From the NCBI GenBank assembly GCA_965637545.1, contig OZ281500.1, positions 3,534,001 to 3,598,000 on the forward strand: a DNA stretch of 64,000 bases, in the 5' to 3' direction. The notes under the pieces are model-generated. The model was not told the DNA's origin and made no database searches. It saw only the letters and a program-made list of their open reading frames with translations. This document shows positions 42,634-64,000 of this stretch, piece after piece. Source of the stretch: Phallusia mammillata. Its lineage: Eukaryota. The translations under genes and the position numbers were made by a program. Numbering within the stretch: position 1 is the first letter of the stretch; each line of letters opens with the position of its first letter.

Positions 42634-45600
42634 ATGATAATGGATGAGTTTAATGGCGAAGTGGAGGAAAACCCAAAAATCCTCAAAGGATTGTTACCAA
42701 ATTCCAAGACAAAAGATGAAAGTAACAAACGGTGAGCCAAGACATTTAAAACATCATGAATATAAAAGATAAGTTGAAGTAGACGCTAAAAAGTCATGTT
42801 TGATTTCGGTTATAGCTTTGTTTCATGACCGTTTGAGCGGTTTCTGGACTCTCTGGAGAAATGTTTGAACGACCATTTACTCAATTTCATATTCACCTAG
42901 ACTTACTAGTGTTGCATAATCCGAATAATCCAAAAATATTCACTCCCTGTCGGATGTTGATCATAACCACAGAAACTAAACAAAACTATGATTAATTATG
43001 AAAATTGATTAAAGTGTGCCAAATTTCGATCCCCTTAGCTTAGTACGACAGATCCGCGATTTGTCTTCTAAAGCTCAATAAACTATTATTGTTAAAATAC
43101 GTTGATTTTTGCAGTGACTCGTGGGGAAGCAGTCGGGAATCGTTTCTTGTGTTTCTTGGCTATTCTGTGGGGATCGGAAATGTGTGGAGGTTCTCCTATC
43201 TGGCTTTTGTTAATGGCGGAGGTAGATTGCAATCCACCTTGATAGGCCACGACTTTGGCAAATGCCACCGTTTTCAGTTCTTGCCGAAACGATAAAAAAC
43301 ATGTTGCTTTATAAGTCTACTGGGGCTACTTGAAAGAAAAATCCTTTAAGATCTATAGATAGACATAGCTATATGGCCTATATAGCTTAGCCTCCCTAGT
43401 TATTGGAGAAAAAGGCGTTTTACGGTTTAGTTACGAACGGTCTAGCGGGGTAAATAAACAAATATATACAAAAAATTTCAAAAAACTTTAAGACAGGTTT
43501 CTATAGAGCGTACAGAATGTTTTGCACAAATTACTTTAAACTTTATTCTGCAGGATGAAAAGGGTTAGTTTTGTTTACCTTAAATTCTTCCGTTTTTTCG
43601 TAGGGGCATTTCTCATTCCTTACATAATGTTTGCCATTTTTGCCGGTTTTCCTCTATATTTCCTGGAGGTCGCTTTGGGGCAATACACCAAGAAATCTGC
43701 TATTGAAATGTGGAATATTGTTCCTGCTATGAAGGTAAACAACAAAAACATCCAGTTCAAACAGGATTGTGAGTGGGCAGAAAAATAGGACTCGAACACG
43801 AGTACAAACCCAAGTCCGAGCTGTCGTTAAAATAAAGCCCGGATTCAGACTAAATGTTAGACTTTCTAAAGTTAGATTTCAGACCCAAAGTTAGACTTGT
43901 AAAAGTTAGATTTCAGACCAAAAGTTAGAAAGTAAAATTATGAAACAAATGTGGCTTTATGTAATGTCGAGTCTGATATCAACCTTGTTCTACTTAAACT
44001 GAAGATACGCCGCAATGTTTTGCAGGGTATCGGATACGGCTCGATTATTTTATGCTTTTACAGTTCCATGTATTATATCATGGTACTTGCTTGGTCTGTG
44101 TTATACCTCGGACACAGTTTCACGTTGGGAGACCTTAAGTGGAGCACTTGTGGTAAGAAAGACTCAAGTTTTTTAAACCTATTTTAATGCTTAGCGTTTT
44201 TTAGTTTTTATTAACAAAATGCATGATCGTACTAATAATGAAAAGTCCCCATTTACTTTACGTTTGAAAATCACTGGATTAGTGTACAATTAAACACAAT
44301 TGAACATAAAACGTTCATACTTGCTTTTTGTGCCACTTTGGACACAAGTCGTTTTGTTAATAACACTTCACAAATTGACAAATTCGTTAAACGGACGACC
44401 CCGCCCCGCGCATCTAACCAAAAATCCACAAGGAAGGCATCCCTCTGCGACCAATTGTTTCGTTTGTTAATTGGTACTCCAACCTACAACCTTGCAAAGT
44501 ACCTAGCGAAAGTTATTTCTCAGCTTGTGGGCAATACAGTATGGACTGTTTCGAACTCGTCCAAGTTTGTTCAAGGGATAGCACAGTTGCCGCCCCTGTC
44601 CAAAGAAGAGGTAATGGTGTCGTATGACGTCGTGTCACTTTTTACAAGTGTGCCAGTGGACCTGGACATTGGACATTGCGTCATCCAAGATTTTAAATGA
44701 CCATAGCCTTAAAGTCAGAACAACATGGTCCCCGTTGGATATTGTGGACGGTTTGCGGATTTGCTTGGAGCAATCTTATTTAACATTCAGGGGAAGCTTT
44801 TACCAACAGGTTCAAGGCACAGCGATGGATTCCCCGGTCTCTGTGGTTGTCGCAAACATGACAATGGAAGCGCTTGAGGAAAAAGCCTTATCAACATTTG
44901 CCAACCCACCAAGATTCTGGCGGCAATATGTTGACGACATTTTTTGTGTCATTATTACTGAGAATCAGGTTGAGGCATTTTTACGGCATCTCAACGAGGC
45001 GCAACCAGGCATTCGGTTTACCATGGAACTCCAATCGGTAAACTTTCTTCCATTTTTAGATGTTCAAGTCACAAGAACCAATGACGGTGACTTGTACTCG
45101 AGAGTTTACCACAAGCCAACGAGTACCAGCAGGTATCTTAATTTTCGATCTCATCACCCCACATACCAGAAAAGAGGGGTGGTTCGTTCCCTAAAAGATC
45201 GCGCATGACGCTTGTGCACACATAGCGACGACTGCGAGGTGGAACTGACAAAGGTTCGCAAAGCCTTGAAATTTAACGGCAACTTGCCCCGAACAGGTGA
45301 CCCATAAAAAAACAGAGGGTTTTCTGACACTTCTGTACATACCCAAACTGACGGATATTTGCGGCGTATGTTGCGTGACTTCGGCATAGCGGTTGGCGTC
45401 CAACCTGCCAATACTCTCCGCAAGCTGCTGAGTCACCCAAAAGATCCAATCAATACCTTTGAACAACGAGGTGTTGTATATTCCATTCCCTGCGCCGAGT
45501 GTCCGTTAATATATATCGGGGAGACTGGAAGGTCACTCAACACCCGACGAAAAGAACATCAACGGGATGTTGCCAACAACGACGCGAAGAAGTCGGCCCT

Positions 45601-48600
45601 TTCCAATCACGCGGTATCACAAGGCCACTGTATTGATTTCAATGCGGCGTCTGTTGTAGCCCGGGAGCCTGACTACAGGAAAAGACTATTTCTTGAGTCA
45701 TGGAATATTCACCAGCAGGGCAACACAATGAACATCAAAACAGACGTGATGCTTTCAGCGTGCTACAGGCACCTGCTCAAAGATTAGAGGCCCAATCATT
45801 CGTTATCGCGCGGTGTTTTCGTTGCGTTGTGCCATGCTTGCGTTTCATTCTTTTTTCCTTTGTTTATCGTGCACTGTTCTAGTCGCATTCAGTGTTATCT
45901 ACCCTGATGAAGACGACCTGTATGTCGGAATAAAAATACATTTGCCAGAAGAGCTCTATAAACTTGATACTATGTCTGGCAGCAATAGCTTATTTAAATT
46001 CGTAAAACGTTTAGGCGTTTCTGTGACAAAGATTTCGTAATAATTTACTTGTCATTTGTATATTGTTTGCGTAATATTTTTTTAACCTATGCCCGGATTG
46101 CAGGCAACTGGTGGAACACCAATAGCTGCCTTCTTTATTCGTCCATCAGCGAAACTCATAACAATACCATATTACTGAATGGTTCTCTTGTGGGACAAAG
46201 CAATGTAACAGAGGGAGTTTACGCAATCAGCGAATTCTGGCAGTAAGTATTGTCTAAAAGCTTTTCCACATCAGGCATTGCAAGTCAATTCAAAGGGCTT
46301 GCTCAAACATATGGTTAGAGATCCGGCAATAAACAGATGTTACAATATATTTAAAACAACAAAAATTCTTGAAAAAGCTTTTTTTTAATTTAATTCTTTT
46401 ATTTGAATTTAAATGTTTGACTTGGGTTTTGCATTTTGTACGAATTATTTGCGTAAAAAAATGATTCTTACATTTTTTAGGCACTACGTCTTGCGTAAGT
46501 CAACTGGAATCGATGATATTGGAACGACAACCAACTATCCGTTGCTATTGAGTTTTTTCATTTCGTGGATTCTGGTTTACGGGTGTTGCTGCAAGGGAGC
46601 CTCTTCAGCTGGCAAGGTATTGTGAGGTCCTGGGTTCAAATCCTGAGGAACGACAACGTGATGCACCGAAACGACTTTGTCTGAACTGACCGTTACAACC
46701 AAAGTTACCTTTAAATTTTCCCTTAGTTGTCTATAGCCCCCAAAAAGTTGCAAATAGCCCTCATTAAACCCTGCCAATTCATGATTTGAATCGATTAGAT
46801 TATTTAACATTTGACTGATTGCAAGTTCCAAAATTGCCTTGACCTCATGTTTGTTTCGTTTGAAAAAACATGGGCAGAATACTTTTGACCATACGCAAAA
46901 CCCGAAATTTTGTAGTAAAGTAATCAAACTGTTCTGTTAACGACAAAAACAAATGATCTTATGATGCAGCAAAAGGGTAGCTAAAAAAGGTGTATATAAT
47001 GCAAGGAAAAACAACCTACAAACAGGCATAATTTCTTTTCAGCAATCAGATCCCAGAAAATTAAAAACGGTGTCATAATGGGATGCATATTACGCCGAAA
47101 AAAACGCAGGTATATCTTAATCTAGCCATCTGGAAGGTCTACCGGCTGTTTAAATTTCCATTAATTTAAAGGCTTTCGTATTACATTGGAAATCGTTCCA
47201 TGCAGCGAACTGAGGGAGATTGTATGTTTTAAAGATTCACTTTTAGGTCGTGTACGTCACTGCTACTTTCCCTTATATCATACTCACTGTGCTTCTTGTG
47301 AGAGGTTGTACACTACCGGGCGCTGCGGAGGGGGTTCTCTTCTATATAATTCCAAACATGACGAAACTGGCCCAAGCTCAGGTACGATATTTTTACACCA
47401 ATAAAAAGTTTACACCAACGACCACTTAATCTGCAACAGATTAAACGTCAAAGCTTGGCTGCTATTGTTCCTGGTTTATAGGCTAATACGTCAAAAAATA
47501 TAGGATTTTTCCTAATTTTACTACCAACATATGAAAGTTTGTGATCAAATAGGTCAATTTAGACGATCATTTAACACATTCAATCAGTAGTTTCGCTGAC
47601 CCTTTTAATCCCTAGAATGGTTTCTGGGGTACGATATGCATAGCGAGTCCCTATTTTTTCTAATGAGTCCGCAGACCTAAAGTAGTTTATTAAACTGGGT
47701 TCTTTTCTACATAGCAAAGTTGCAAATAACTAAGTTGGCTTGTGTCCTATTAATAGATGTTAAATGTTCGTATTAAACATCTTCTAAAGAGCAAACGCAA
47801 ACTCTATCTGAATCACTGCGTCTTTAATATTAATGTATTATACAACGTTTAGTTTCTCATTGGTCGCTTTGTATTATATTTTCCATTTTAGGTCTGGGTA
47901 CAGGCTGGAAGCCAAGTGTTGTATTCCTATGGAATCTGCTTCGCTGCTTTGGTTACATTTGGAAGTTACAACAACTACAAGACAAATTGTTTCAGGTAGG
48001 TTATAAACTAATCAAAAATGTACTATCCCAAACCGGAGATATATAAACAAATTTATGTTGTCGCAAACATGTGTAATCAAATATAACTTACTTAAGAAAG
48101 GCCGTTTATTGATATATGGTTCAAAGAAACAATTTGGGTTATAAATAAGTTGTTTTTTAAATTTCTGGCCACGTTGAGGTACGTGTTTGACTGTAAAATG
48201 AACCAACCATTTCACTCTAATTACAACATGTTTTGTAGTTTTAGTATTGTACAGTATTTATTGTGACTTTTGTTTTAAGGGTTTGCACACAAATCACATT
48301 CGCAAGCAGCGCAACTTCTGTCTATGCCGGTTTCTCTGTATTCACTGTAGTCGGTCATTTGGCTTACTTGCAAGGAAAAAATGTGTCGGACGTGATTGGC
48401 CATGGTAAGAATATAAATACAAAACAGGGTTACAACGTAACCCAAATTTGTTATTAGCTGAACATTTACGAGCTAAAACGAGCAATTGTCTGCACAACTA
48501 CGTACATCTCTATTAGCCGACTAACATGACCGTGCTAAATCGCGTTTTTTGTAAATTGAGCCGGTCTGAAAACACAGCCATTTTGGCCCTGTTGGTGCGA

Positions 48601-51252
48601 TAATTTTTTTTTTACGTACCAAACAAGTTTGGTCTTGAACCATCGTTAGTAAACGGGATAAAATGGACTAAAAACATCTTGCAACTTTCTAGGTCCAGGT
48701 CTTGCATTTCAAACTTATCCAACTGCAATTTCTTTGATGCCTGCTCCACAAGTGTGGGGGATTTTGTTTTTTCTGATGCTGATAATGCTTGGAATCGACT
48801 CACAGGTAAACAGTTGGCTGTCAAATACCAGATGAGAAGCACAATTAAATATGATCTTATCTTTTATCCTAAAGGATTATTGTTTTGTAATTATTTTTGT
48901 GTGTGAGCTGAGTTCAATCTTTTTTTACATTATACTTTATTAGCCTTCATTAACTTTTTTGTTCTACCTTTGCCAGCAGTACTATTAAAACTCTGAAATT
49001 GAATAATGAAATTATTCCTATTTGTAGTTCACTTGCGTGGAAGCAATAATTTCGTGCACAATTGACAAATGGCCGAAGACATTTGCAGCAACAAAGCGAA
49101 AGAGATTGCTGACACTAGCTGTTTGCGTCATTTTGGCTCTTATTGGTTTACCACTAACCACAGGGGTACGTCTTTAAATACTTATTTTCCATATTTGTTC
49201 TCATAACTGCTATAATGTATCCATGCAAGAACGCAAATTTTAAGGGTGGACGATCGAGCATAAAGGCTTCTCAACCTTTTTTGCTCCAAAACGCATTTAT
49301 ATCACAAGTTCAAGATGTATTTGTTAACAATGTGCTATTTTCCCAACTAATTCAACAAAACGTCTAGGGTTGAATGGTAGGCTATAACATAACTCCTGCT
49401 GTTTATATGCCCTAATCCATAATTTTAGAGAGGTCTACACCATGATAAATTTTCTAAATGTTCTGTCTTCATGTTTTCCGTAACTTTAAAGGTCATTACT
49501 CGATATTTTTAAATTTGGGCTTTGGGCTTTCCTTTCTTCACAAATTCAAGCTTTTTGGTGTCTATGACTTTACCTTACCGTTGGTTTAAATTTAAACAAT
49601 GCTCTTTTGTTCAGTGCGGAATTTATCTCTTTGAGTTGTACAACAACTATGCTGTAAGCGGCTTCAGCCTTCTCATTCTAGCCGGGCTTGAGTCAATAAC
49701 AATTGGACACGTGTATGGGACTGATAGGTTGTACGCCAACATTAAGGATATGATTGGATACCGTCCTAATCCATACGTGAAATACTGCTACAAGTTTATT
49801 GCACCAGTTCTCATATTGGTACGTTGTTTTATAATTGTTATAGTCCTGTAAAAGCAAAAAAACTGTAACAGGCAATCAAGTGTAATTAACTTTGACTTTT
49901 TCCCGTTTGGAGTTAGGCAATATTTTGAAATACCGGTAATTGCATAAATTGTAACTTAGTTAAAGTTTTTTTGCAATTCTTTAAACTTACACGATTTGAC
50001 ATTTAACTAAAAATTATTTTTTTCTAAATGTATATGGTCAGGCGCCCTGGACCATTCGGCCAAATTCCTGCGGCCAAAGGCTGTTATTTTTTTTTGAACG
50101 AACGAATCCCGATCAGTTTTTTATGTCTGTATATGGGTCAGACACACTAGACCAGTGGTCGGCAACCGCCGGTCCGCGGCCCGGTACCGGTCCGCGAGGA
50201 GTTCGTTACCGGGGCGTATAATTTTTCAGGTTAAATGCTATGAACATTTTGCCCATGTATTTCGGGGATGATAAACTAATTTAAGCGTTTTTATTGCTAA
50301 ATATTTGTAGTTTTTTTTTATGACCGGTCCGCGGTAAAATTTTGATTTCAAAAGCGGTCCGCAGTGCAAAGAAGGTTGCCAACCCCTGCACTAGACCATT
50401 CAGCCAAGTTCCGCTGTTATAGCGGTTGTAAGTAAATATAACCGACTAACAACACCAAGCGGTTAATATCGTCATAAAAGTCCAAGAAACTCCGAGAAGT
50501 CTTTCTATGATTTCTTTATGTGATTTCAGGGAATACTTATCTTCTACGGGTTTAACTACACACCTTTAAAATACGGAAAATACGAATATCCAGTCTGGGC
50601 TCATGCATTTGGGTGGTTCACCGCTTTATCGTCCATTTTTTGGATTCCATTCTTTTTCATCAAAACTTTATACAGAACGAATGGTACCTGGAGAGAGGTA
50701 AAAACAAAAAAAATATTATGTACCTAATTAAATCAATTTACATGACCAAGTCTTTCAAATAGACAGCATATACGATTCTTTATCCTAAATGAAATTTAGT
50801 GCATGGATTTATGATTTGATAGTTATATTCGTAGTTGCTATGGCAACAAAACCAGTTTGCAAAGAGATACAATAACATAAAAATCATGTGGTTATTTTGT
50901 TATTCTATATGTTACTTCTACATTGGTTTTCTGCATCGGGTAGCAACACAAGTCGACTACTACAAAAAAAAATATTGACGAAACGCCTAAGCTTTATCAT
51001 GTCGGATTAACGTTTAACTATACCTAAATTAATTATGCTTTTTTGAAAAACTTCCGGTCTAATCTAGTCAAACTTGACTGGAGTGCCCAAATAAATGACT
51101 GGAATGCCCAAAATAAAATATACCACCCCCAAAAAAACACTACACTATAAAAACAAAATTTGTTTCAGAAACTTTGCTTGGTGTTACGATCGGAAGAATC
51201 TGACCAGAAATTTCCTATTGAAACCATTCAGCTGAAACAACCAGAGATTTAG
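42634..51252 (+). CDS. SLC6 (sodium/chloride-dependent neurotransmitter/amino-acid symporter family) transporter, 14 exons, 602 aa
   Basis: Exons 42634-42731, 43115-43221, 43604-43734, 44026-44152, 46104-46242, 46481-46616, 47247-47381, 47892-47995, 48280-48404, 48693-48805, 49028-49165, 49615-49818, 50530-50697, 51169-51252; total 1809 nt. Motifs [47 protein letters not shown]6 resembles the GABA/taurine/creatine subfamily. Confidence 0.93.
43844..43929. repeat. 34-bp minisatellite, about 2.5 copies
   Basis: ttcagac...gttagact...aaagttaga recurs at 43844, 43878 and 43912. Confidence 0.75.
44380..45930 (+). mobile_element. Penelope-like retroelement (RT + GIY-YIG endonuclease), 5'-truncated and defective, in an SLC6 intron
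   Basis: [58 protein letters not shown], then [24 protein letters not shown]...LFLESW. Frameshifts (incl. a 7-bp duplication at 44664-44677) and an in-frame TGA at 45206-45208. Confidence 0.95.
45904..45930 (+). ncRNA. Degenerate hammerhead ribozyme core at the 3' end of the Penelope-like element
   Basis: CTGATGA-A-GACG[ACCTGTA]TGTC-GGAA: intact CUGAUGA box and 4-bp stem II, but GAAA reads GGAA and no stem III is visible. Confidence 0.55.
50029..50071 (-). mobile_element. Fragment of the tRNA-derived SINE
   Basis: tgtatatggtcaggcgccctggaccattcggccaaattcctgc aligns to the 5' half of the 35898 copy. Confidence 0.75.
50087..50412 (-). mobile_element. tRNA-derived SINE copy split by a hAT MITE
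   Basis: T-run, acgaatcccgatcag...gggtcagacacactagac, [MITE], cactagaccattcagccaagttcc. The halves rejoin into the SINE consensus. Confidence 0.8.
50153..50388. mobile_element. hAT (Buster-type) MITE, 236 bp
   Basis: TIRs cagtggtcggcaacc / ggttgccaacccctg. Perfect TSD cactagac (50145-50152, 50389-50396), TA-centred. Confidence 0.92.
50834..50847. promoter_or_regulatory. Near-perfect RFX X-box in the last SLC6 intron
   Basis: GTTGCTATGGCAAC is one mismatch from the palindrome GTTGCCATGGCAAC. Confidence 0.4.
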
Positions 51253-52920: not shown

Positions 52921-54306
52921 TTTTATACCGGAATTATTTTTACACTCCAACATTTAAATTATTTGGGGTTCAAAACATGTATGCGTGTACAGATTATACG
53001 TCGATATACGTTCTGTTGGGTACAGTTATCAACGTAACTGGAAAAATAGTCATACCAAAAAAATTTAGAGAAAATTTTATTCATGATATCCTCATATAAC
53101 ATGTATTATGAGAACTGGGAAGTATCAGCTGAAATTAAAATAAACAAATAAAAATGCCATTATGGAAATAACATTTTTCACAAAACAAATCTTTGCTTGT
53201 ATGCTGTCCAGGTGGATTAGTTGAAGAATCTTTTCCAATTTTGTTTTCCATTGGTTGTTGCATGTAACAATTTTAGTTGTATTTGTTCACACTGTCTTTT
53301 TTCAAAAATGGATTTGCTGTTGTGCTTCATGGTAATTCTTGTAAAAAAAATGATATGTAGTCCTTGATTGATGCAAAAAATATATTTAGGACTGAAAAGT
53401 GTCAAAGAAATGATAAAATATAAAAAGCAGAATAAAAGATTGTACAATACCTCATAAGATATTGTCAAAAGCTTTTAACATCAAAATACAGTATGTAAAG
53501 AATGACGTCACTATTACGTCATCACTTTTTTGACGTTGGAGGAACATATTCAAACTATTTATTCCAATTTTAGATGACTATACATCACAACCTTTGTATC
53601 TTTCGGGACTTAAGTAGGCTACATGTATATCTGCTGGAAAATTTACCCGCTAAAACCTGATTTAAACTCCATCTCATGTTCATCAGTTCCATTTAAACAT
53701 TATAAGTTGAGCGCAGTTATAGTTTTATTCAAAATTTTGCAGAATTTGCAAAATCAAACACCGCAAAAGTATTCAAATTAATCATTTTATAAATCAGCCC
53801 CTTAAGGCGCAATGCAAAATTCGCGCTAATTTTGCCCCATTTTTGAGTTGAGTTGAGTTTATTTCGCTCGGTGAAAAAATCGTATAGTAACACAATTGCA
53901 CTAAAATATTCACCTTGCCGGAGATAGCTGCGCAACGTTGAGACGTTAAAGAATGCGACACTGTAGAGGGCACAGTTGGTGGAGATATGAGAAACGCGCT
54001 GCAGCTACACCGTTATTATGAGCGTTATGTGACGGGGACTCACATCAGAGGGTGAGGTTGGCGCATTAGGACGTCAAGACTGGGGGTGAAACGTTGGTGG
54101 AACCAGTCAGGTTAGGACCTAATCTAACCACCCGTGTTAGGGAAAGAGGGTGGAAACCCTGCCGGATAGTTTCGAGCGCCGGAAGAAAGGGTGAAGAACA
54201 CACATTGTGGGTGTTAACCTTTGAATTTGTTAAAAATTCTAAAACTTGAAAACTAGTCGTAGTTCGCATTGGACTACATAAAAATAGATAACAGATTGAT
54301 GTAAAG

Positions 54307-56512
54307 CAGTGGTTCCCAACCTTTTTGTTGTCGCGTACCACTTGAAGGCAACGCATTGTTGCCGCGTACCACTTGTTTTTAGAGAAGTATTTTCGAGAAG
54401 ATAACTTTTTTATTTCCCGAATCGACTAATGCAAATGTAACGAAGAAGTAAAAATGAAGAAAAGATAAATTTAATGAGCAATCTGTATTTGTTTGCCTTC
54501 TACAAGTCGATCGATGCGGGGCACAACTTTGCTTACTGCACATCGGAAATAATGGCCGGGGGAAGTAAGGCGGTTACGACTCTTCTTCTTGATATTCATC
54601 ATTGAAGAGAATCCCTGCTCGCACTCCCACGTAGAGGGGAATATTAGTAACTGGGGTGTAGCGCGACCGGCTAATGTGGGATACGAGGAGGCCATATTCA
54701 GCCAAAAAACTGTAGGAGAATATTCCTTGTGCATTGCCTGTGTAGTGTCGTCAGCCTGAATATCGATGAGCTGCTCTTGCTCCCCAGTTCCAACAGGTAG
54801 GTCGGCTGGGTCCACAGAGAATGGGTTAGTGATGCAGGGACAGCAATCCACATCCGGGAAGTAATGAGTAAGCTCAGCTTTTAGTACCGTGAAGTGGCAT
54901 AATATCTCATCATCACTTTGGCCATTGTATCCTCTCGGAAGATTACTAAGTAGTTCGAACATTCCATAGCGCTTGTTTTTTACGTTATTTGACCAAAGTT
55001 CCAGCTTGCGCACAAATGCCCGAAGCCTTGAGATAAACTGAGTGACAGTGCACTGCAGTCAGTTCCTTGCATTGATAGGTTCAGGTGGTTGATGACCCCA
55101 AAAATATCAGAGAGGTAAGCCAACCTTACGATAAACATTTCATCCTCAAAGTCTTTTTGAAATTCATGGCCCTTTTGTTTGAAAAAAAACGTATAATTCT
55201 TCTTTCAGTTCGAAAAGGCGTCAGGTCGCGTTGCTTCGGAAAAGCCAACGCACCTCCGTATAGTAAAGGAGACAAGTGTGTTGAGAGCCCAGATCTTCGC
55301 AGAGTAGTTTGAACAATCGAGTATTCAAGGCAGACGTTTTCACTGCATTAACCATTTTTACAACCCGGTTTAAACAGGCTAACAAATTTGGCGGCAGCAC
55401 TTTAGCGCAAAGGGCGAATCTGTGTATAAAACAATGGACAAAGATGACGTTTGGCGACACAGCTTTTACATGGGCTTGAAATCCGGATTTACGGCCAAGC
55501 ATAGCCGGAGCCCCATCAGTCGTGCAGCCAACCAACTTCCCCCACTCTAGTTCATTCCGCTTGAAAAAGTCGTTCAAAACATTAAAAATATCCACTCCTT
55601 TGGTTGTGGCTTGAAGGTCTGACTTAACAGTAATTCGGTATTTACAAGTTGAATTGCAAACCCATACTTTGAAGATCTCACTGCTGCAACAACTTGGTCG
55701 GCAATGTCGATCGACATTTCCTCAATACGACGCTTCACAGTGTTATTAGACAGGGACACACTGGACAACTTGGCCTCCGCCTCCACCCCGATCACGTTTC
55801 GAATCAAGATTTTCGCCGCTGGCGTAATTAGAGACTCAGCAATTGTATGCGCATTCATGTTTTGGGCAACCAGGAGGGAAACTTCAAATGAAGCTTTTAC
55901 ATTCCCAGAGCTGCTCTGGTACACGGCGCCTGTTTTATCAATGCGTTGCTGTTTAGCTTTTTCTCAAAGGCGCTGAAAGTAGCTAAGATCTTGGTCCTTT
56001 TTTGTAGGATGGTTTGTTTCAAGATGCCGCTTGAGCAGACTTGGTTTCATGGCACTATTCGAGAGCGTCTTCATGCAAACCATGCACTGCGAGACAACCT
56101 CGCCTCTGTGTTCAATTTGTACGAATCCATATTTTAGATAACCCGTGTCATACTTTCGCTTCGACATTTTTCGAAATCAAATTGGTAAAACGTTTGTAAC
56201 GCACTTTCTACAGTAGACTACAACTCTCAAGCACACTAATTCAACTACAGGCGTATTATCCCTACGTTTGTTATTGTTACCACGAAATAATAAGAACAAA
56301 GACATATTATTTTCAAACAATGCCTACCTTACTGGTGGCACCTTAAATGGGTTAGTTGGAGCAAACATAGAAGTGACACGTAACCCGGTGGATTCAGTAA
56401 CAGACATTTTGTTATCACTTCTGATTTGTGTGCAAAAAAACGGAAATCGCAAAATACCAAAAGGTGTTCGCGTACCACTAGTGGTACGCGTACCACCGGT
56501 TGGGAAACACTG
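54307..56512 (-). mobile_element. Buster-type hAT DNA transposon, 2206 bp, defective transposase (copy A)
   Basis: TIRs cagtggttcccaacc / ggttgggaaacactg (14/15). Perfect TSD atgtaaag (54299-54306, 56513-56520). Transposase 56167 to 54471 with BED finger (C-x2-C...H-x4-H), TTDGAPAMLG, HCFIHR, STWECEQGFS. Premature stops, frameshifts and loss of the DEST catalytic region. Confidence 0.96.
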
Positions 56513-57050
56513 ATGTAAAGGAACACTTCCTCTATAAATGTACACGATTAGTAAAAAGAAAAAAAGAAAAAAAAATCGAAATTCAGAAGCAACATGTATT
56601 CGGTCGAGGGCATCGAAGGGGGACGTGGGTCGCAGTATCAAATCCATCCAGGTTGTTCGACAGCTGTCTGTAAAAATATTGGCAGCAAGTCAACTGCTCG
56701 AGCAATTACCAGACAACAATCACACAACGCAAGTGGTTTTGTTAGTTAACACACGTGCACACACATACTAAAACAGGTGTTCGTGACAAACCAAACTTTT
56801 ATAGTGTAGGCTATAGGTGTATTATCAAAAAAATACAGATTATAAAGTCGTAGCTTGGCAACTTAATCGACCACGTAATTTGTGGCGAACTTTCACTCCG
56901 AAAAATTTGCATTTATTGTTTGCTGTTGAAGTTACTTTTATTGCGTCACAATGCGCATTGTTGCGTATCCCAACTTTTACATTGTTACGTCACAATCTGA
57001 CCCGTGCTTCAAGAGTCAGTCAGTAATGTTTCTTGGTTCATTGAGATACA

Positions 57051-57869: not shown

Positions 57870-57943
57870 TTTTATTATACGGTCCGGTAATGAACTCGTT
57901 GCGGACCGATACCGGGCCGCGGGCCGGCGGTTGCCGACCACTG
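57870..57943. mobile_element. Single-ended fragment of the 50153 hAT MITE family
   Basis: Reverse complement of the 50153 left end, ending in cggcggttgccgaccactg. Confidence 0.8.
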
Positions 57944-58776
57944 GCTTATCGGATCAATTCGAACTTTTCATGTTTTAGCCTCTCATGCATATCTTCAAAA
58001 TAAGGCATCGCACGATGTTCTAACTACGTAGCGATTAAAAATTATGACAAATGTCGAAAATCAACCTAAATTTTTTTTATTGCATCGTATAATTTATTGC
58101 ATCAACTTAAATTGCATGGTTCGTTTTACAGCAGCGATTTGTTTTAAACATCAATGATGACATGCGCGCTTCTGCAAATGACAAAGCCTACAGCTGCAGT
58201 ATTTAATATGGCATTTAGTGTTGATGTGTAAACTAGAAGTACATTAAACTTTCTCTAGAAGCTTGCACGAAAAACACGCCAATTAGCATTTAGCTTATTT
58301 TGATGTACTGTAATTTAATGTAGTGACTCAACATGGGGCAGATAATACTGTTGTTTTGTTAAGGTGCCTTATTTTCGGTGGTTAGTTTCTGGTAGCAAAT
58401 TGGAAGTAATCTACAAGATGGATGTTGCAATAAACCTGCTGGATAAAGATAAAGACATGAAAGTCCAAGTGAAACAGAGCAGCACCGCTTCGGGAGAAAA
58501 GGGAAGGTAGTTAAATTTCTTTCTTAAAGAAACTAGATAAAATGTGCATACTTTGCCGACTTTTTGCCAGTCATGTGTATTGTAAATCTGGTGTGTTTTT
58601 ACCACATTGATACGCGTAAGAAATTCTAATTACAGGCAGTCTTGGGGAAGCAACGTTCAACCCTTTCTAGCCCATCTCGGTGCTGTTATAGGTCTCGGAA
58701 ACATATGGAGATTTCCGTATATCGTTTATGCATACGGCGGAGGTACGAATAAATGTTCGTGTTATATGACATAATG

Positions 58777-58900
58777 CAGAGGTCGGCAACCTTTTTTGCA
58801 CAGTGCATCGGTTTGAAACTGAAAATTCTCGGGCCGGCCTTTAAAAACCACAAATGTTCGGCACTGAAAACTAATACAGTTATTACAACTTTGATTCAAT
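58777..58900. mobile_element. Single-ended hAT MITE fragment in an SLC6-2 intron
   Basis: Starts cagaggtcggcaacc and matches the reverse complement of the right half of 62293-62489. Confidence 0.7.
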
Positions 58901-59307
58901 ACTAAAATTACCCTTTGCAGGGGCTTTTTTGATTCCTTACCTTGTATTTGTGATCTTTGGTGGATTTCCACTTTTGTTTCTTGAAGTTGCAATGGGCCAA
59001 TATACACGTGAAGCTGCAATAAATATGTGGAACATCGCACCCATCATGAAGGTAGCTGAATTTGTATGTTTTTCGGTGTTGTAAACGTAAAAAAATCATG
59101 CTTTTTAGGGTGTCGGATTTGCCTGTAGCCTACAGTGCTCGTTTTGTACAGCAATGTTTATTACATTACCGTTATGGCCTGGTCAATATTCTACTTTGTA
59201 CATTCTTTAACGACCAGTGTGTTACCATGGATGCACTGTGGTAAGCCAAATGAAATGTTGAATGACATAGCCATAACATTGTTTTTATTTTTGATGTATT
59301 TTATCCC

Positions 59308-60776
59308 ACGCCTGTAGTTGAATTAGTGTGCTTGAGAGTTGTAGTCTACTGTAGAAAGTGCGTTACAAACGTTTTACCAATTTGATTTCGAAAAATGTCG
59401 AAGCGAAAGTATGACACGGGTTATCTAAAATATGGATTCGTACAAATTGAACACAGAGGCGAGGTTGTCTCGCAGTGCCTGGTTTGCATGAAGACGCTCT
59501 CGAATAGTGCCATGAAACCAAGTCTGCTCAAGCGGCATCTTGAAACAAACCATCCTACAAAAAAGGACCAAGATCTTAGCTACTTTCAGCGCCTTGGAGA
59601 AAAAGCTAAACAGCAACGCATTGATAAAACAGGCGCCGTGTACCAGAGCAGCTCTGGGAATGTAAAAGCTTCATTTGAAGTTTCCCTCCTGGTTGCCCAA
59701 AACATGAATGCGCATACAATTGCTGAGTCTCTAATTATGCCAGCGGCGAAAATCTTGATTCGAAACGTGATCGGGGTGGAGGCGGAGGCCAAGTTGTCCA
59801 GTGTGTCCCTGTCTAATAACACTGTGAAGCGTCGTATTGAGGAAATGTCGATCGACATTGCCGACCAAGTTGTTGCAGCAGTGAGATCTTCAAAGTATGG
59901 GTTTGCAATTCAACTTGTAAACCGAATTACTGTTAAGTCAGACCTTCAAGCCACAACCAAAGGAGTGGATATTTTTAATGTTTTGAACGACTTTTTCAAG
60001 CGGAATGAACTAGAGTGGGGGAAGTTGGTTGGCTGCACGACTGATGGGGCTCCGGCTATGCTTGGCCGTAAATCCGGATTTCAAGCCCATGTAAAAGCTG
60101 TGTCGCCAAACGTCATCTTTGTCCATTGTTTTATACACAGATTCGCCCTTTGCGCTAAAGTGCTGCCGCCAAATTTGTTAGCCTGTTTATACCGGGTTGT
60201 AAAAATGGTTAATGCAGTGAAAACGTCTGCCTTGAATACTCGATTGTTCAAACTGCTCTGCGAAGATCTGGGCTCTCAACACACTTGTCTCCTTTACTAT
60301 ACGGAGGTGCGTTGGCTTTTCCGAAGCAACGCGACCTGACGCCTTTTCGAACTGAAAGAAGAATTATACGTTTTTTTTTCAAACAAAAGGGCCATGAATT
60401 TCAAAAAGACTTTGAGGATGAAATGTTTATCGTAAGGTTGGCTTACCTCTCTGATATTTTTGGGGTCATCAACCACCTGAACCTACCAATGCAAGGAACT
60501 GACTGCAGTGCACTGTCACTCAGTTTATCTCAAGGCTACGGGCATTTGTGCGCAAGCTGGAACTTTGGTCAAATAACGTAAAAAACAAGCGCTATGGAAT
60601 GTTCGAACTACTTAGTAATCTTCCGGGAGGATACAATGGCCAAAGTGATGATGAGATATTATGCCACTTCACGGTACTAAAAGCTGAGCTTACTCATTAC
60701 TTCCCGGATGTGGATTGCTGTCCCTGCATCACTAACCCATTCTCTGTGGACCCAGCCGACCTACCTGTTGGAACTG
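59308..60776 (+). mobile_element. TIR-less internal copy of the Buster hAT element (copy B), inverted relative to copy A
   Basis: Matches 54785-56254 (reverse complement) with roughly 9-10 differences seen by eye. No TIR or 8-bp TSD at either end. Contains ORF 59395-60339 (314 aa). Confidence 0.93.
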
Positions 60777-61963
60777 TGTTTTATTTTAGGCAAAACGTTG
60801 TTGCTTAACATAAAGGTCAAAAATAAACTAGACGAAAGCCACGATAAATGGTCAATAAACGGTAATTTTTTGAAACATACGAAATATATAAGAATACCAC
60901 CTTTCTAGTTGCCTATCATTGCATTCAGTCCGTTTCGATAAGAACTTTCGAGACCTGAAAACGTTCAAACACGTAAAAGGACGAATAATAAAAAGGACGA
61001 ATCTCGACCTTTTTGTGGTTAACAGTGAAGTCTTAAAACAGTTTTTGTCCTTTTCAGCAAATATGTTCTGCGAAAATCAGCCGGTTTGCATGAATTGGGT
61101 TCACTGAACAACTGGCCCATGGTGCTGTGTCTTGCAGCAGATTGGATGATCGTGTATTTTTGCGTATTTAAAGGCGTGAAATGGTCTGGAAAGGTGAGAG
61201 TTCGGTTGTTAAATGGCAAGATGTTAGTAGTCTTCGAATTCAAAATTACAAAGTTGTGGTGGAAATTCGTACATATGGCGCGGGTTTGTTTCCTACATTT
61301 TTAGTCTGGTTGAAAAAGTCCAAATTTGCACACACACTAAATTAATTAATTATGTAGCCATTTTGTAGAATGGGGCACAAATTGCCTTGATAATTAAGCT
61401 TTTATTTCTTTTTACTAGCCGTTACAAAATTTGCAGTATATGCAAATGGGAGTTTCAGTCAGTGGAAACAACCGTGTTATCTACGAATATGTCAAAACAC
61501 ATGAAAACTCAGTTCACTGTAACCAATTCAATGAAACTAACAGATCCATCATTATTGTCATAATTTTCAAAATACCCGCTTTAGAAAGGCCCTTATTTGT
61601 ATCAAATCTAAGGAACTAAGATGCGATGCTATCAGAATAAGTATTTTATCCATTTAAAACCACAACACAATACAAATCATGATTTTAATGTGCGTTTGGG
61701 TGCGGTGCATCGTCTGCATATACACTCGTGGCGCCTGTCAAAGGCAATTCGCTGCTTTCCTGTCACAAACAATAGAGCGTTGTTTTCTGTTCATATTTCT
61801 GGAAAATTAATTTATTGTTTCCTTCCATTAAAAACAGGATTGTAGAGTTTCTATTGTCTTTTTCCGTCCGGATAATACCGGATGCTGAATGTAATTCATC
61901 ACTTTTTTAAACCGATATATGACAGTATCATTTTGTGGCTAATCCACAAATAACAACCTAAAC

Positions 61964-62185
61964 CAGTAGTTCTGAAACTGTACGTCGCGACGCCCTGGTG
62001 CGTCGTTTCAATTTTCCAAGGGCGTCGCAGAATAGTTCCTTTTCGTGGCTTTTTGTTGTTGCACTTGCATCAATAAACACAACTTTAAAAATAAGTTTCC
62101 TCATTAACTTGTATTTCTGGTGCGTCGCAAGTCCTGAAAAACTTGTCCAGGGGCGTCGCAACAATGAAAAGTTTGAGAACCACTG
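61964..62185. mobile_element. hAT (Buster-type) MITE, 222 bp
   Basis: TIRs cagtagttctgaaact / agtttgagaaccactg (14/16). Perfect TSD acctaaac (61956-61963, 62186-62193). gcgtcgc subrepeats. Confidence 0.92.
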
Positions 62186-62292
62186 ACCTAAACCATTGTG
62201 TAGAATTAGAAATGGAATTTTAAAGTTAAACCACAGATTAACTAAAACGAAATTTAGATTGTAGTTTAAATCGGCAGGGGAATGCTTGAGCG

Positions 62293-62489
62293 CAGTGGTC
62301 GGCAACCACTAGGCCGCGGTGTCACATAACTCTTGGTCATGACCTTGCAAGGTTTCACATTAAATCAAAGTTATAATAACTGTAATTAGTTTTCAGTGCC
62401 GTACAAATATGAGGCTTTTAAAGGCCTGCCCGTGAAAAAAGTTTCAGTTTCAAACCGGTCCGCAGTGCAGAAAAGGTTGCGAACCCCTG
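62293..62489. mobile_element. hAT MITE related to the 50153 family (older copy)
   Basis: TIRs cagtggtcggcaacc / ggttgcgaacccctg. Flanks only 5/8 identical. Confidence 0.8.
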
Positions 62490-64000
62490 TTTTATCGTAC
62501 CATTATAGTATCAGGATCCTTGGTTAAAACCATTAAATCTCAAAAGCAATCCGTTGTTGTATCTTGTTGAACTTTCAAGATGTTACGTTTTGTAAAAAAA
62601 TTCAAAACACTAGACAAAAATCATTCCTTTAAAATTTGCCCCAATACTTTTAACCGGATTTCAAATCGTGCCTTTTCTTGGGCTTGATGCATGGCACGTT
62701 TTATTTCCCCAAAACCATAACTTTTCCGGGCCATTACTAAGAACCCCGCCATAAAACCAACCACATGTTAATGGTAGCATTAACTCTTGACCTTTTCCAT
62801 TAACCTATAAACGTTAACCTTTTGAAGGTTCGTGAAACCAACGTCTAAACCCCAAATATCTGATTCATAGCAGTATCGCATTACATTGCAACAAAACAAA
62901 ACAGTTTGTTCTTACTGTAACGTTTTCTGTCGCGTGTTCCCCTTTTTCACGCAAACGTCACACAGTGTGGCTCAATAAAAAACGCGGACACCATAAGGGA
63001 ACGACAATTCGTTTTAATGGTATGGTCAATTCCGCTTTTTCTGCACAAGAAAAACGAAAGCATATAAAGCATGAATCACAATATAACACGCAATAAAGTA
63101 AACATACCGACTGTTTGGCCACAGGGGTTTTGGTATTAAATGATGCTTTAAAGGCCGAACAAATCCTGCACAAACAACCAAACATTTACAGGTTTAGAAC
63201 AAAACTTCACATTACAGTACAAAGCCAAACTTACCCGCAAAATGATTCACAAATGCAGCTTTATCAAACTCAGCAATTTATTTATACTTTCTAGCTGCTA
63301 AATAAAGGTATCAGAGTTTAGATTGATGGCTTCAATTCAAATTATGCCTGTCAGCAGTTCACAAACGTACACCACGAGGAACACTAACTGTTGCGTCACA
63401 GGACAATTGTTATACGTTTTGCTGGGCAAAGTTATGTTCACAACAGTTGGCGAAAACGACGTAACAGTTACGTTGTTTACTAGCTACATGAAAAGAAGCG
63501 AGTTGCATCACAAAATGTTGAACTATGCATCTCAATTTTCTAACATGGTTAATACCAACAGTGCAGTTTTAGTCTTAATTATTTCCCCTTTTAGGTCGTC
63601 TACTTCACTGCTACATTCCCGTACATCATCCTACTGGTGCTTTTAGTGCGAGGATGTACGCTAGACGGCGCTCTTGGAGGCATCCATTTTTATCTCAAAC
63701 CCAATATGACCAAGCTTCTAGAACCCAATGTACGTTTCAATTATTTTTTTGTTGTACCACATATGTGCTTGTATAGTTTAACCGGGTCACTATTGACTCG
63801 TAACAAAACGACGATTGTCTGGTTTTCGTGACCACGTCACGTAGTCAGTTTGCCGTCATTCTGCAATACGTCACTCTCCTTTACATGTCATTGTGTTATT
63901 CCTATGCAATTTGTTTTGCTACTATGGTGGCTTTCGGTAGCTACAACCAGTTTCATATGGACTGTTACAGGTACTGTATTTGTTCGTGCATGTTTTTATC

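What the first reader, a model, noticed from the sequence alone, without database searches (positions are those of the whole stretch)
59241..61057. Inverted, TIR-less copy of a neighbouring transposon sits where an SLC6 exon should be
Copy B (59308-60776) is about 99% identical to the interior of copy A 3 kb away, in opposite orientation, yet lacks 258 bp and 478 bp of the ends, both TIRs and any TSD, so it cannot have arrived by normal cut-and-paste. The flanking exons end in phase 1 and start in phase 2, requiring the EL2 exon (139 nt in the paralogue, with the second disulfide Cys), and none is recognisable. B starts 67 nt into the intron after a pyrimidine tract, where the acceptor would be expected. 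This fits templated double-strand-break repair that replaced an exon. The pair forms a 1.47-kb-arm inverted repeat able to fold back or recombine.
Basis: partly seen in the sequence, partly recalled or inferred. Interest (0 to 1): 0.7.

Follow-up and report, generated by a model that had tools for sequence, protein, structure and literature searches.

The report
Transposon fragment replaced exon in dead gene
In a sea-squirt genome, a 1.47-kb end-less piece copied from a hAT transposon 3 kb away fills a deletion that removed one exon of a tandem SLC6 transporter gene; the gene copy is a decaying pseudogene, so this is a clear scar of DNA break repair and not a functional novelty.

Summary
Copy A (54307-56512) is a complete non-autonomous hAT element with terminal inverted repeats and an 8-bp target duplication. 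Copy B (59308-60776) is A's positions 479-1948, inverted, 99.3% identical, with no ends and no duplication.

A and B are sister copies. They alone share a 69-bp deletion and 14 substitutions that 14 other family copies lack. No other genomic copy has B's breakpoints.

A third SLC6 paralogue just downstream of the window is about 91% identical to the affected gene and preserves the ancestral state: a short intron, the acceptor AG, then a 130-nt EL2 exon. Homology to it stops exactly at B's first base, 2 nt before that AG, with a 2-nt overlap (AC).

The right junction appears without a mismatch in contigs of three independent sequencing studies, so misassembly is unlikely.

The best reading is one break-repair event that deleted the acceptor, the exon and part of the next intron, and filled the gap with DNA copied from nearby A. 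This is a large "repair-mediated duplication".

The host gene is a pseudogene. It also has a 5-bp frameshift and a 30-bp splice-site and exon deletion. The only spliced transcript seen comes from the intact downstream paralogue.

It is a new member of a known kind, of modest interest.

The parts
54299..54306 (.). Left 8-bp target-site duplication of copy A (ATGTAAAG)
   Evidence: Read directly. It is identical to 56513-56520.
54307..56512 (-). Copy A: a complete but non-autonomous hAT element of 2,206 bp, with broken transposase frames on the minus strand
   Evidence: The terminal inverted repeats match at 14 of 15 bases and the element has an 8-bp target duplication. Pfam finds Dimer_Tnp_hAT in 54474-55013(-) and zf-BED in the B copy of the N-terminus. 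It lacks 69 bp that other copies carry.
54785..56254 (-). Donor segment of A, positions 479-1948 of the element, which B duplicates
56513..56520 (.). Right 8-bp target-site duplication of copy A
59109..59240 (+). TM3 exon of SLC6 gene 2. It ends in phase 1 and carries a 5-bp frameshifting insertion at 59126-59130.
   Evidence: Alignment to gene 3. The insertion is absent from gene 3 and from its mRNA contig. It is present in the run X2 contig covering 58915-59161, which has no gaps.
59241..59307 (+). Remnant of the short TM3-EL2 intron: donor GT and pyrimidine tract are present, the acceptor AG is missing
   Evidence: It aligns to gene 3's intron up to 2 nt before gene 3's AG.
59308..60776 (+). 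Copy B: an inverted internal fragment of A with no ends, 1,469 bp. Its first two bases (AC) fit both A and the ancestral intron.
   Evidence: The junctions are unique in the genome.
60777..60870 (.). Internal piece of an old multi-copy repeat, truncated on both sides and abutting B's right end
   Evidence: It matches many genomic loci at 77-91% identity. Family sequence continues upstream and downstream in the other copies but not here.
60871..61057 (+). Unique remainder of the intron, ending in the acceptor of the TM4 exon
   Evidence: It has no other genomic match. Homology to gene 3's intron is weak from about 60939 and clear from 61033.
61058..61193 (+). TM4 exon of gene 2; it starts in phase 2
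   Evidence: Pfam SNF profile positions 162-204. Read directly.
63889..63890 (+). Site of a 30-bp deletion in gene 2 that removed the acceptor and about the first 21 nt of the TM6 exon
   Evidence: Alignment to gene 3. Gene 3's mRNA carries 23 letters here that gene 2 lacks (table 5c).
46104..46242 (+). EL2 exon (139 nt) of the upstream paralogue, gene 1, used for comparison

Best explanation
A DNA double-strand break, or a collapsed replication fork, in SLC6 gene 2 was repaired imprecisely in the germ line. The repair lost the last 2 nt of the short TM3-EL2 intron (the acceptor AG), the whole 130-nt-class EL2 exon and part of the following intron, up to a point inside an old repeat copy.

One resected 3' end, ending in ...AC, paired through this 2-nt microhomology with the hAT copy A 3 kb upstream, on the same chromatid, the sister or the homologue. 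About 1.47 kb of A's interior was copied. The new strand was then released and joined to the other broken end. This is synthesis-dependent strand annealing or microhomology-mediated template switching, that is, a 'repair-mediated duplication' with deletion. No transposase step is needed, which explains the lack of terminal repeats and target duplication and the inverted orientation.

Shown: the donor-copy relationship, the exact breakpoints, the ancestral state, uniqueness in the genome, and presence of the right junction in three samples.

Inferred: that it was a single event and that the fragment was synthesised from a template and not ligated in.

The gene carries two other disabling lesions, so the event has no present functional consequence. 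It leaves a 1.47-kb inverted repeat around the gene's first four recognised exons.
For: B equals A positions 479-1948, inverted, at 99.3% identity.

A and B alone share a 69-bp deletion and 14 substitutions that 14 other family copies lack. Other copies are at most 98.3% identical over partial overlaps and at most 96.9% over near-full overlaps.

The A/B differences are spread evenly, with none piled up at B's ends.

Gene 3 is about 92% identical across the TM2-TM3 exons and the short intron, and it shows intron, AG and a 130-nt EL2 exon at the homologous place. Homology ends at 59309, with AC shared between intron and donor.

No other genomic locus holds either junction, and no other scored family copy lacks both ends.

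The right-junction contig 60747-61085 has 0 differences in X1, X2 and X3.

The features fit those described for repair-mediated duplications: donors mostly under 5 kb from acceptors, microhomology of 2-9 nt, and accompanying deletions (PMC2671141).
Against: The fragment (1,469 bp) and the deletion (at least 132 bp) are larger than those reported for proximal repair-mediated duplications in human, where the largest was 619 bp and deletions were 1-15 nt.

Microhomology at the right junction cannot be fixed, because the ancestral sequence there is unknown.

Templated synthesis cannot be told from ligation of a free hAT fragment by sequence alone.

A contig bridging the left junction was not among the pieces listed.
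Confidence: 0.6

Rival explanations
1. Capture of a free hAT fragment by end joining. A copy of the A lineage was excised by transposase supplied in trans, or existed as extrachromosomal DNA. Its ends were nibbled back by 258 and 478 bp. The fragment was then ligated into a nearby break whose ends had also been resected, deleting the exon.
For: The sequence outcome is the same as in the best explanation: no ends, no duplication, either orientation, and only 2 nt of overlap at the left junction. The family has many young copies at 94-98% identity, so transposase activity was recent. hAT elements are known to reinsert near their donor site (general knowledge of Ac/Ds).
Against: A is still in place with intact ends and target duplication, so the fragment would have to come from a sister chromatid, a homologue or a replicated copy. 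Losing several hundred bases from both ends of a free fragment and then ligating it is a less common outcome than copying from a proximal donor. Proximal donors dominate natural repair duplications.
Confidence: 0.15
2. Ordinary local transposition followed by separate deletions. A daughter of A hopped into or beside the EL2 exon. Two later deletions each removed one element end plus adjoining host DNA. Optionally, gene conversion from A kept the remnant nearly identical to A.
For: The host gene is a pseudogene in which deletions are neutral. It shows a separate 30-bp deletion and a 5-bp insertion. Inverted repeats 3 kb apart can undergo gene conversion.
Against: It needs three or more events where one is enough. 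The left breakpoint falls 2 nt before the acceptor with an AC overlap to the donor, as expected of a primed junction. There is no trace of a terminal repeat or target duplication. A/B differences are evenly spread with no more diverged edges, which argues against a conversion tract laid over an older fragment.
Confidence: 0.12
3. Assembly artefact: reads of copy A or of another family copy were wrongly placed in a gap of gene 2.
For: The arms are nearly identical and close together, a layout that can confuse assemblers. No listed contig bridges the left junction.
Against: B differs from A at 10 sites and 2 indels, and at about half of them B keeps the family's consensus letter while A does not, so B is not a pasted copy of A. 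The right junction is present with 0 differences in three independent runs. The contig is 25 Mb long. An X2 contig confirms gene 2's own 5-bp lesion nearby.
Confidence: 0.03

Closest known systems
Repair-mediated duplication by capture of proximal chromosomal DNA (Pace, Sen, Batzer and Feschotte 2009, PMC2671141)
   Same: A unique duplicate of a nearby sequence sits at a former break site. The donor is within 5 kb, there is no target duplication, the junction has short microhomology, and target DNA was lost.
   Different: It is much larger than the proximal cases in that survey (1,469 bp against a maximum of 619 bp) and the deletion is far larger (at least 132 bp against 1-15 nt). The donor is a transposon and the acceptor is a gene, so an exon was removed. 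The organism is an ascidian.
Microhomology-mediated break-induced replication or fork-stalling template switching, which gives inverted templated insertions (my own knowledge; PMC8421209 was listed but not read)
   Same: An inverted copy of a nearby segment is inserted with a deletion and with microhomology of 2 nt or so at the switch point.
   Different: Only one template segment is seen. Nothing here separates a replication origin from a break origin.
Aberrant or alternative transposition of hAT elements, such as the fractured Ac elements of maize (my own knowledge)
   Same: A hAT-derived fragment that lacks a terminus lies next to a rearrangement close to its parent element.
   Different: Fractured elements keep one true end, and their breakpoints lie at transposase cleavage sites. 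B lacks both ends, and neither breakpoint is at an element terminus.
Abortive gap repair giving internally deleted hAT or P elements (my own knowledge)
   Same: Repair synthesis uses a transposon copy as template. The same family shows many such derivatives in this genome.
   Different: Those products keep both ends and lose the interior. B is the reverse.

Membership tests
hAT superfamily DNA transposon (copy A) | 8-bp target-site duplication | tested here: met
   An identical 8-mer flanks 54307-56512.
hAT superfamily DNA transposon (copy A) | Short terminal inverted repeats | tested here: met
   The first 15 bases match the reverse complement of the last 15 at 14 of 15 positions.
hAT superfamily DNA transposon (copy A) | Transposase with a BED zinc finger and the hAT C-terminal dimerisation domain | tested here: met
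   Pfam zf-BED scores 22.4 bits (cut-off 20.6) and Dimer_Tnp_hAT 21.9 bits (cut-off 21.4). The frames are broken, and a 69-bp deletion removes the region that encodes the conserved acidic motif in other copies, so the copy is non-autonomous.
Canonical cut-and-paste insertion (copy B) | Element termini and a target-site duplication at the insertion | tested here: not met
   B begins at element position 479 and ends at 1948. Its flanks share no duplication.
Repair-mediated duplication / templated insertion | The insert is a copy of a single identifiable donor elsewhere, here a nearby one | tested here: met
   A is the only copy that shares the private 69-bp deletion and 14 private substitutions. 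It lies 3,053 nt away.
Repair-mediated duplication / templated insertion | Repair signatures at the breakpoints: microhomology, deletion or filler | tested here: met
   The left junction has a 2-nt overlap, AC. The acceptor, the 130-nt-class exon and part of the intron are deleted relative to gene 3. The right junction cannot be determined.
Repair-mediated duplication / templated insertion | An empty (ancestral) site can be shown | tested here: inconclusive
   Only a paralogue, gene 3 at about 91% identity, shows the ancestral layout. No ancestral allele of gene 2 itself was seen in the four runs laid.
Repair-mediated duplication / templated insertion | The fragment was synthesised from the donor, not ligated in | not testable with these tools
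   Sequence alone does not distinguish the two.
SLC6 / SNF sodium:neurotransmitter symporter (host gene) | Match to the SNF family profile | tested here: met
   Single exons score 36-70 bits against PF00209 (cut-off 27).
SLC6 / SNF sodium:neurotransmitter symporter (host gene) | An intact open reading frame across all exons (functional member) | tested here: not met
   There is a 5-bp insertion in the TM3 exon, the EL2 exon is absent, and a 30-bp deletion removes the acceptor and start of the TM6 exon.

The most novel reading that the evidence does not exclude
The A/B pair is more than a scar. Read-through transcription across the 1.47-kb inverted arms, with a spacer holding the pseudogene's promoter and first four recognised exons, would give a long hairpin RNA. 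That RNA could feed small-RNA silencing of this still-young hAT family, so the dead SLC6 copy would have been turned into a transposon-control locus. The only hint is an A-like 2,015-nt contig in an RNA-like run, which could equally come from any family copy or from DNA carry-over.
Probability: 0.05. Interest if true: 0.55.

Novelty: new member of a known kind. Interest (0 to 1): 0.3.

Why it matters
This is an unusually well-documented natural example of break repair copying a large piece of a nearby transposon into a gene and deleting an exon. The donor, the copy and the ancestral layout all lie within about 20 kb, so both breakpoints can be read to the base. It shows that transposon-derived sequence without ends in an intron need not come from transposition. 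It extends the size range of proximal repair duplications, and it does so in a chordate outside the vertebrates. For annotation, it marks the middle gene of a three-gene SLC6 array as a pseudogene with three independent lesions. No new mechanism or function follows from it.

Tried and rejected
- **Hidden EL2 exon in gene 2.** A search with gene 1's EL2 exon peptide against 57-64 kb gave only one weak hit (39% over 38 residues), downstream of the TM4 exon and partly against intron-derived query. I rejected it as chance.
- **Apparent small exon after B.** The stretch at 60790-60861 right after B, with its AG...GT borders, is part of a multi-copy repeat and not coding.
- **Repeat piece right of B as a second templated segment.** I rejected this because its best genomic match is only 91% over 73 nt.
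- **Spliced RNA contig as an intact allele of gene 2.** I rejected this because 16 of its 17 listed variant letters are gene 3's.
- I repeated it with sequences read from files.
- **Exon joining.** Exons were searched one at a time. The joined spliced protein was not built or searched.
- **Earlier notes of the scan.** A word search for similar cases gave nothing.

Full report
**Setting.** The window is C7:3,534,001-3,598,000 of a 240-Mb assembly. Three SLC6 (SNF family) genes lie in tandem on the + strand. Gene 1 is at about 43.0-50.7 kb and gene 2 at 58.4-67.3 kb. Gene 3 is at 71.7-79.1 kb in window numbering continued past the window end, held as L031 and L032. Single exons match Pfam SNF at 36-70 bits. 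I searched exons one by one and built no joined protein.

**The observation.** The repeat finder reports three collinear inverted blocks, 54785-56254 against 59308-60776, at 99-100%. The alignment shows 10 substitutions and two small indels in 1,468 aligned bases, or 99.3%.

Copy A spans 54307-56512. Its terminal inverted repeats match at 14 of 15 bases and it has an identical 8-bp target duplication on both sides. It encodes broken frames with a BED zinc finger and the hAT dimerisation domain. It is a hAT element.

B corresponds to element positions 479-1948. The spacer is 3,053 nt.

**The missing exon.** Gene 2's TM3 exon ends at 59240 with one extra base, followed by the donor GTAAGC. The TM4 exon begins at 61058 after a clear acceptor, with a single base that completes a codon. 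An exon of length 3n+1 must lie between them.
- In gene 1 it is 139 nt (46104-46242).
- In gene 3 it is 130 nt (72682-72811 in continued numbering, L031:8682-8811). It encodes the second EL2 cysteine and three N-x-S/T sites.
- In gene 2, nothing between 59241 and 61057, or elsewhere, resembles it.

**The ancestral state.** Gene 3 is collinear with gene 2. Segments 58904-59309 and 72283-72679 align at 92%, and the next shared block starts at 61033 against 74931. The first block ends exactly at B's first two bases.

In gene 3 the short intron runs on for two more bases, the acceptor AG, and the EL2 exon follows directly. Gene 2 keeps the donor, the pyrimidine tract and the intron up to ...CCAC. 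It then continues with the interior of the hAT element, whose copied stretch also begins with AC. The left junction therefore has a 2-nt microhomology, and the acceptor and exon are deleted.

**The right side.** The 94 nt after B (60777-60870) belong to a multi-copy repeat. Other copies continue for roughly 90 nt or more upstream and 100 nt or more downstream with family sequence that gene 2 lacks. The best genomic match is only 91% over 73 nt, and typical matches are 77-86%. This piece is therefore old. It is not a second segment copied in the same event.

Bases 60871-61032 are unique in the genome. Weak similarity to gene 3's intron starts near 60939. The right breakpoint thus fell in gene 2's own intron, inside or at the edge of an old repeat copy. 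The deletion is at least 132 nt, and its full size cannot be measured.

**Where B came from.** The family has many copies at 87-97% identity to A. Most are internal-deletion derivatives that keep their ends, and none of the scored ones lacks both ends.

In an alignment of A, B and 14 other copies, A and B share 14 substitution states found in no other copy. They also share a private 69-bp deletion in the region where the other copies encode the conserved acidic motif. The next closest copies are 96-98% identical to B.

At the sites where A and B differ, A carries the derived letter at about half and B at the other half. The differences are spread evenly, with none near B's ends. B is therefore a copy of the A lineage, made recently compared with the 8-9% divergence between genes 2 and 3. 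It is not a pasted duplicate of the present A sequence.

**Uniqueness and assembly.** Searches of the whole assembly with each junction find the junction only here. The hAT part hits other copies, the left flank hits gene 3, and the right flank hits the old repeat family.

I laid contigs of four public runs on 58300-64000. A 339-nt contig covering 60747-61085 has no differences in X1, X2 and X3, which come from three studies. That is what a k=31 unitig ending at a repeat boundary looks like. An X2 contig (58915-59161, no gaps) confirms gene 2's own 5-bp insertion in another sample.

**Transcripts.** X6 behaves like RNA, with no depth over the unique intronic bins. It holds a 2,088-nt spliced contig with joints at GT..AG borders. 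That contig has 130 letters between the TM3 and TM4 exons and lacks the 5-bp insertion. Sixteen of the 17 variant letters listed, including all of those listed for X6, are gene 3's letters. The contig is therefore gene 3's mRNA laid onto gene 2's similar exons. No gene 2-specific transcript was seen, although contigs cannot prove absence.

**Gene 2 is a pseudogene.** Besides the lost exon it has two further lesions.
- A 5-bp insertion (59126-59130) shifts the frame of the TM3 exon relative to gene 3 and its mRNA. The scan had noted this separately (s1-349204).
- A 30-bp deletion at 63889/63890 removes the acceptor and about the first 21 nt of the TM6 exon.

The HSP-covered parts of the other exons show no stops or frameshifts.

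**Mechanism.** The simplest account is one imprecise repair event. A break or collapsed fork occurred in gene 2 and the ends were resected, with loss of the acceptor, the exon and part of the intron. A 3' end ending in AC primed on copy A 3 kb away, about 1.47 kb was synthesised, and the new strand was joined to the other end. This corresponds to 'repair-mediated duplication by capture of proximal DNA' (PMC2671141). In that survey most donors lie within 5 kb, and junctions show 2-9 nt microhomology, deletions and filler. Here both the copied piece and the deletion are larger than in that survey.

The shown facts are the donor relationship, the breakpoints, the ancestral layout, the uniqueness and the presence of the right junction in three samples. 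The single-step nature and templated synthesis are inferred.

The rivals, with my estimated probabilities, are:
- ligation of a nibbled free hAT fragment (0.15);
- insertion followed by separate deletions, possibly with gene conversion (0.12);
- misassembly (0.03).

**Comparison and verdict.** B fails the defining tests of a canonical insertion. It also differs from fractured hAT elements, which keep one true end, and from gap-repair derivatives, which keep both. It meets the testable criteria of a repair-mediated duplication, except that the 'empty site' is seen only in a paralogue. It is a new, unusually large and well-documented member of a known kind of event, sitting in a dead gene.

The inverted pair could in principle recombine, which would invert the pseudogene's 5' part, or form hairpin RNA. 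Nothing here shows that it does. Interest is modest.

Noticed in passing
window 59121-59137 (insertion at 59126-59130): A 5-bp insertion, plus one substitution, frameshifts gene 2's TM3 exon. It is absent from gene 3 and its mRNA and present in an independent run (X2). Whether it is a transposon excision footprint was not tested.
   Followed up: partly
window 63889-63890: A 30-bp deletion in gene 2 relative to gene 3 removes the acceptor and the start of the TM6 exon. This is a third independent lesion.
   Followed up: yes
window 44240-45800: A retroelement with a reverse-transcriptase-like frame (44615-45205) and a weak GIY-YIG hit (45308-45784; 20.2 bits, below the cut-off of 22.6) sits in gene 1's TM3-EL2 intron. 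It is probably a Penelope-like element.
   Followed up: partly
window 61929-62119: K-mer depth is about 1,000 to 1,900 times that of neighbouring bins in three DNA runs. This is a very high-copy repeat in gene 2's TM4-TM5 intron. I did not identify it.
   Followed up: no
window 50152-50222 / 57874-57944; 50315-50388 / 62416-62489; 58771-58827 / 62439-62495: Short dispersed repeats at 77-90% identity, in direct and inverted pairs, look like members of a miniature transposon family.
   Followed up: no
window 54307-56512 (laid on 59308-60776): The RNA-like run X6 holds a 2,015-nt contig of A type. It carries A's 2-bp AT and A's letters at two sites, and it extends beyond both ends of B into hAT sequence. 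Copy A or a close relative may be transcribed, or DNA may have been carried over.
   Followed up: no
L031:7700-L032:5100 (gene 3, continued numbering 71.7-79.1 kb): The downstream SLC6 paralogue is intact in all exons examined and is expressed as a spliced mRNA. It is the functional counterpart of the pseudogene.
   Followed up: partly
window 58417-59161: Gene 2 contigs from X2 and X3 differ from the assembly at a few sites, and nearly all the variant letters equal gene 3's letters. This could be shared ancestral polymorphism or gene conversion between the tandem paralogues.
   Followed up: no
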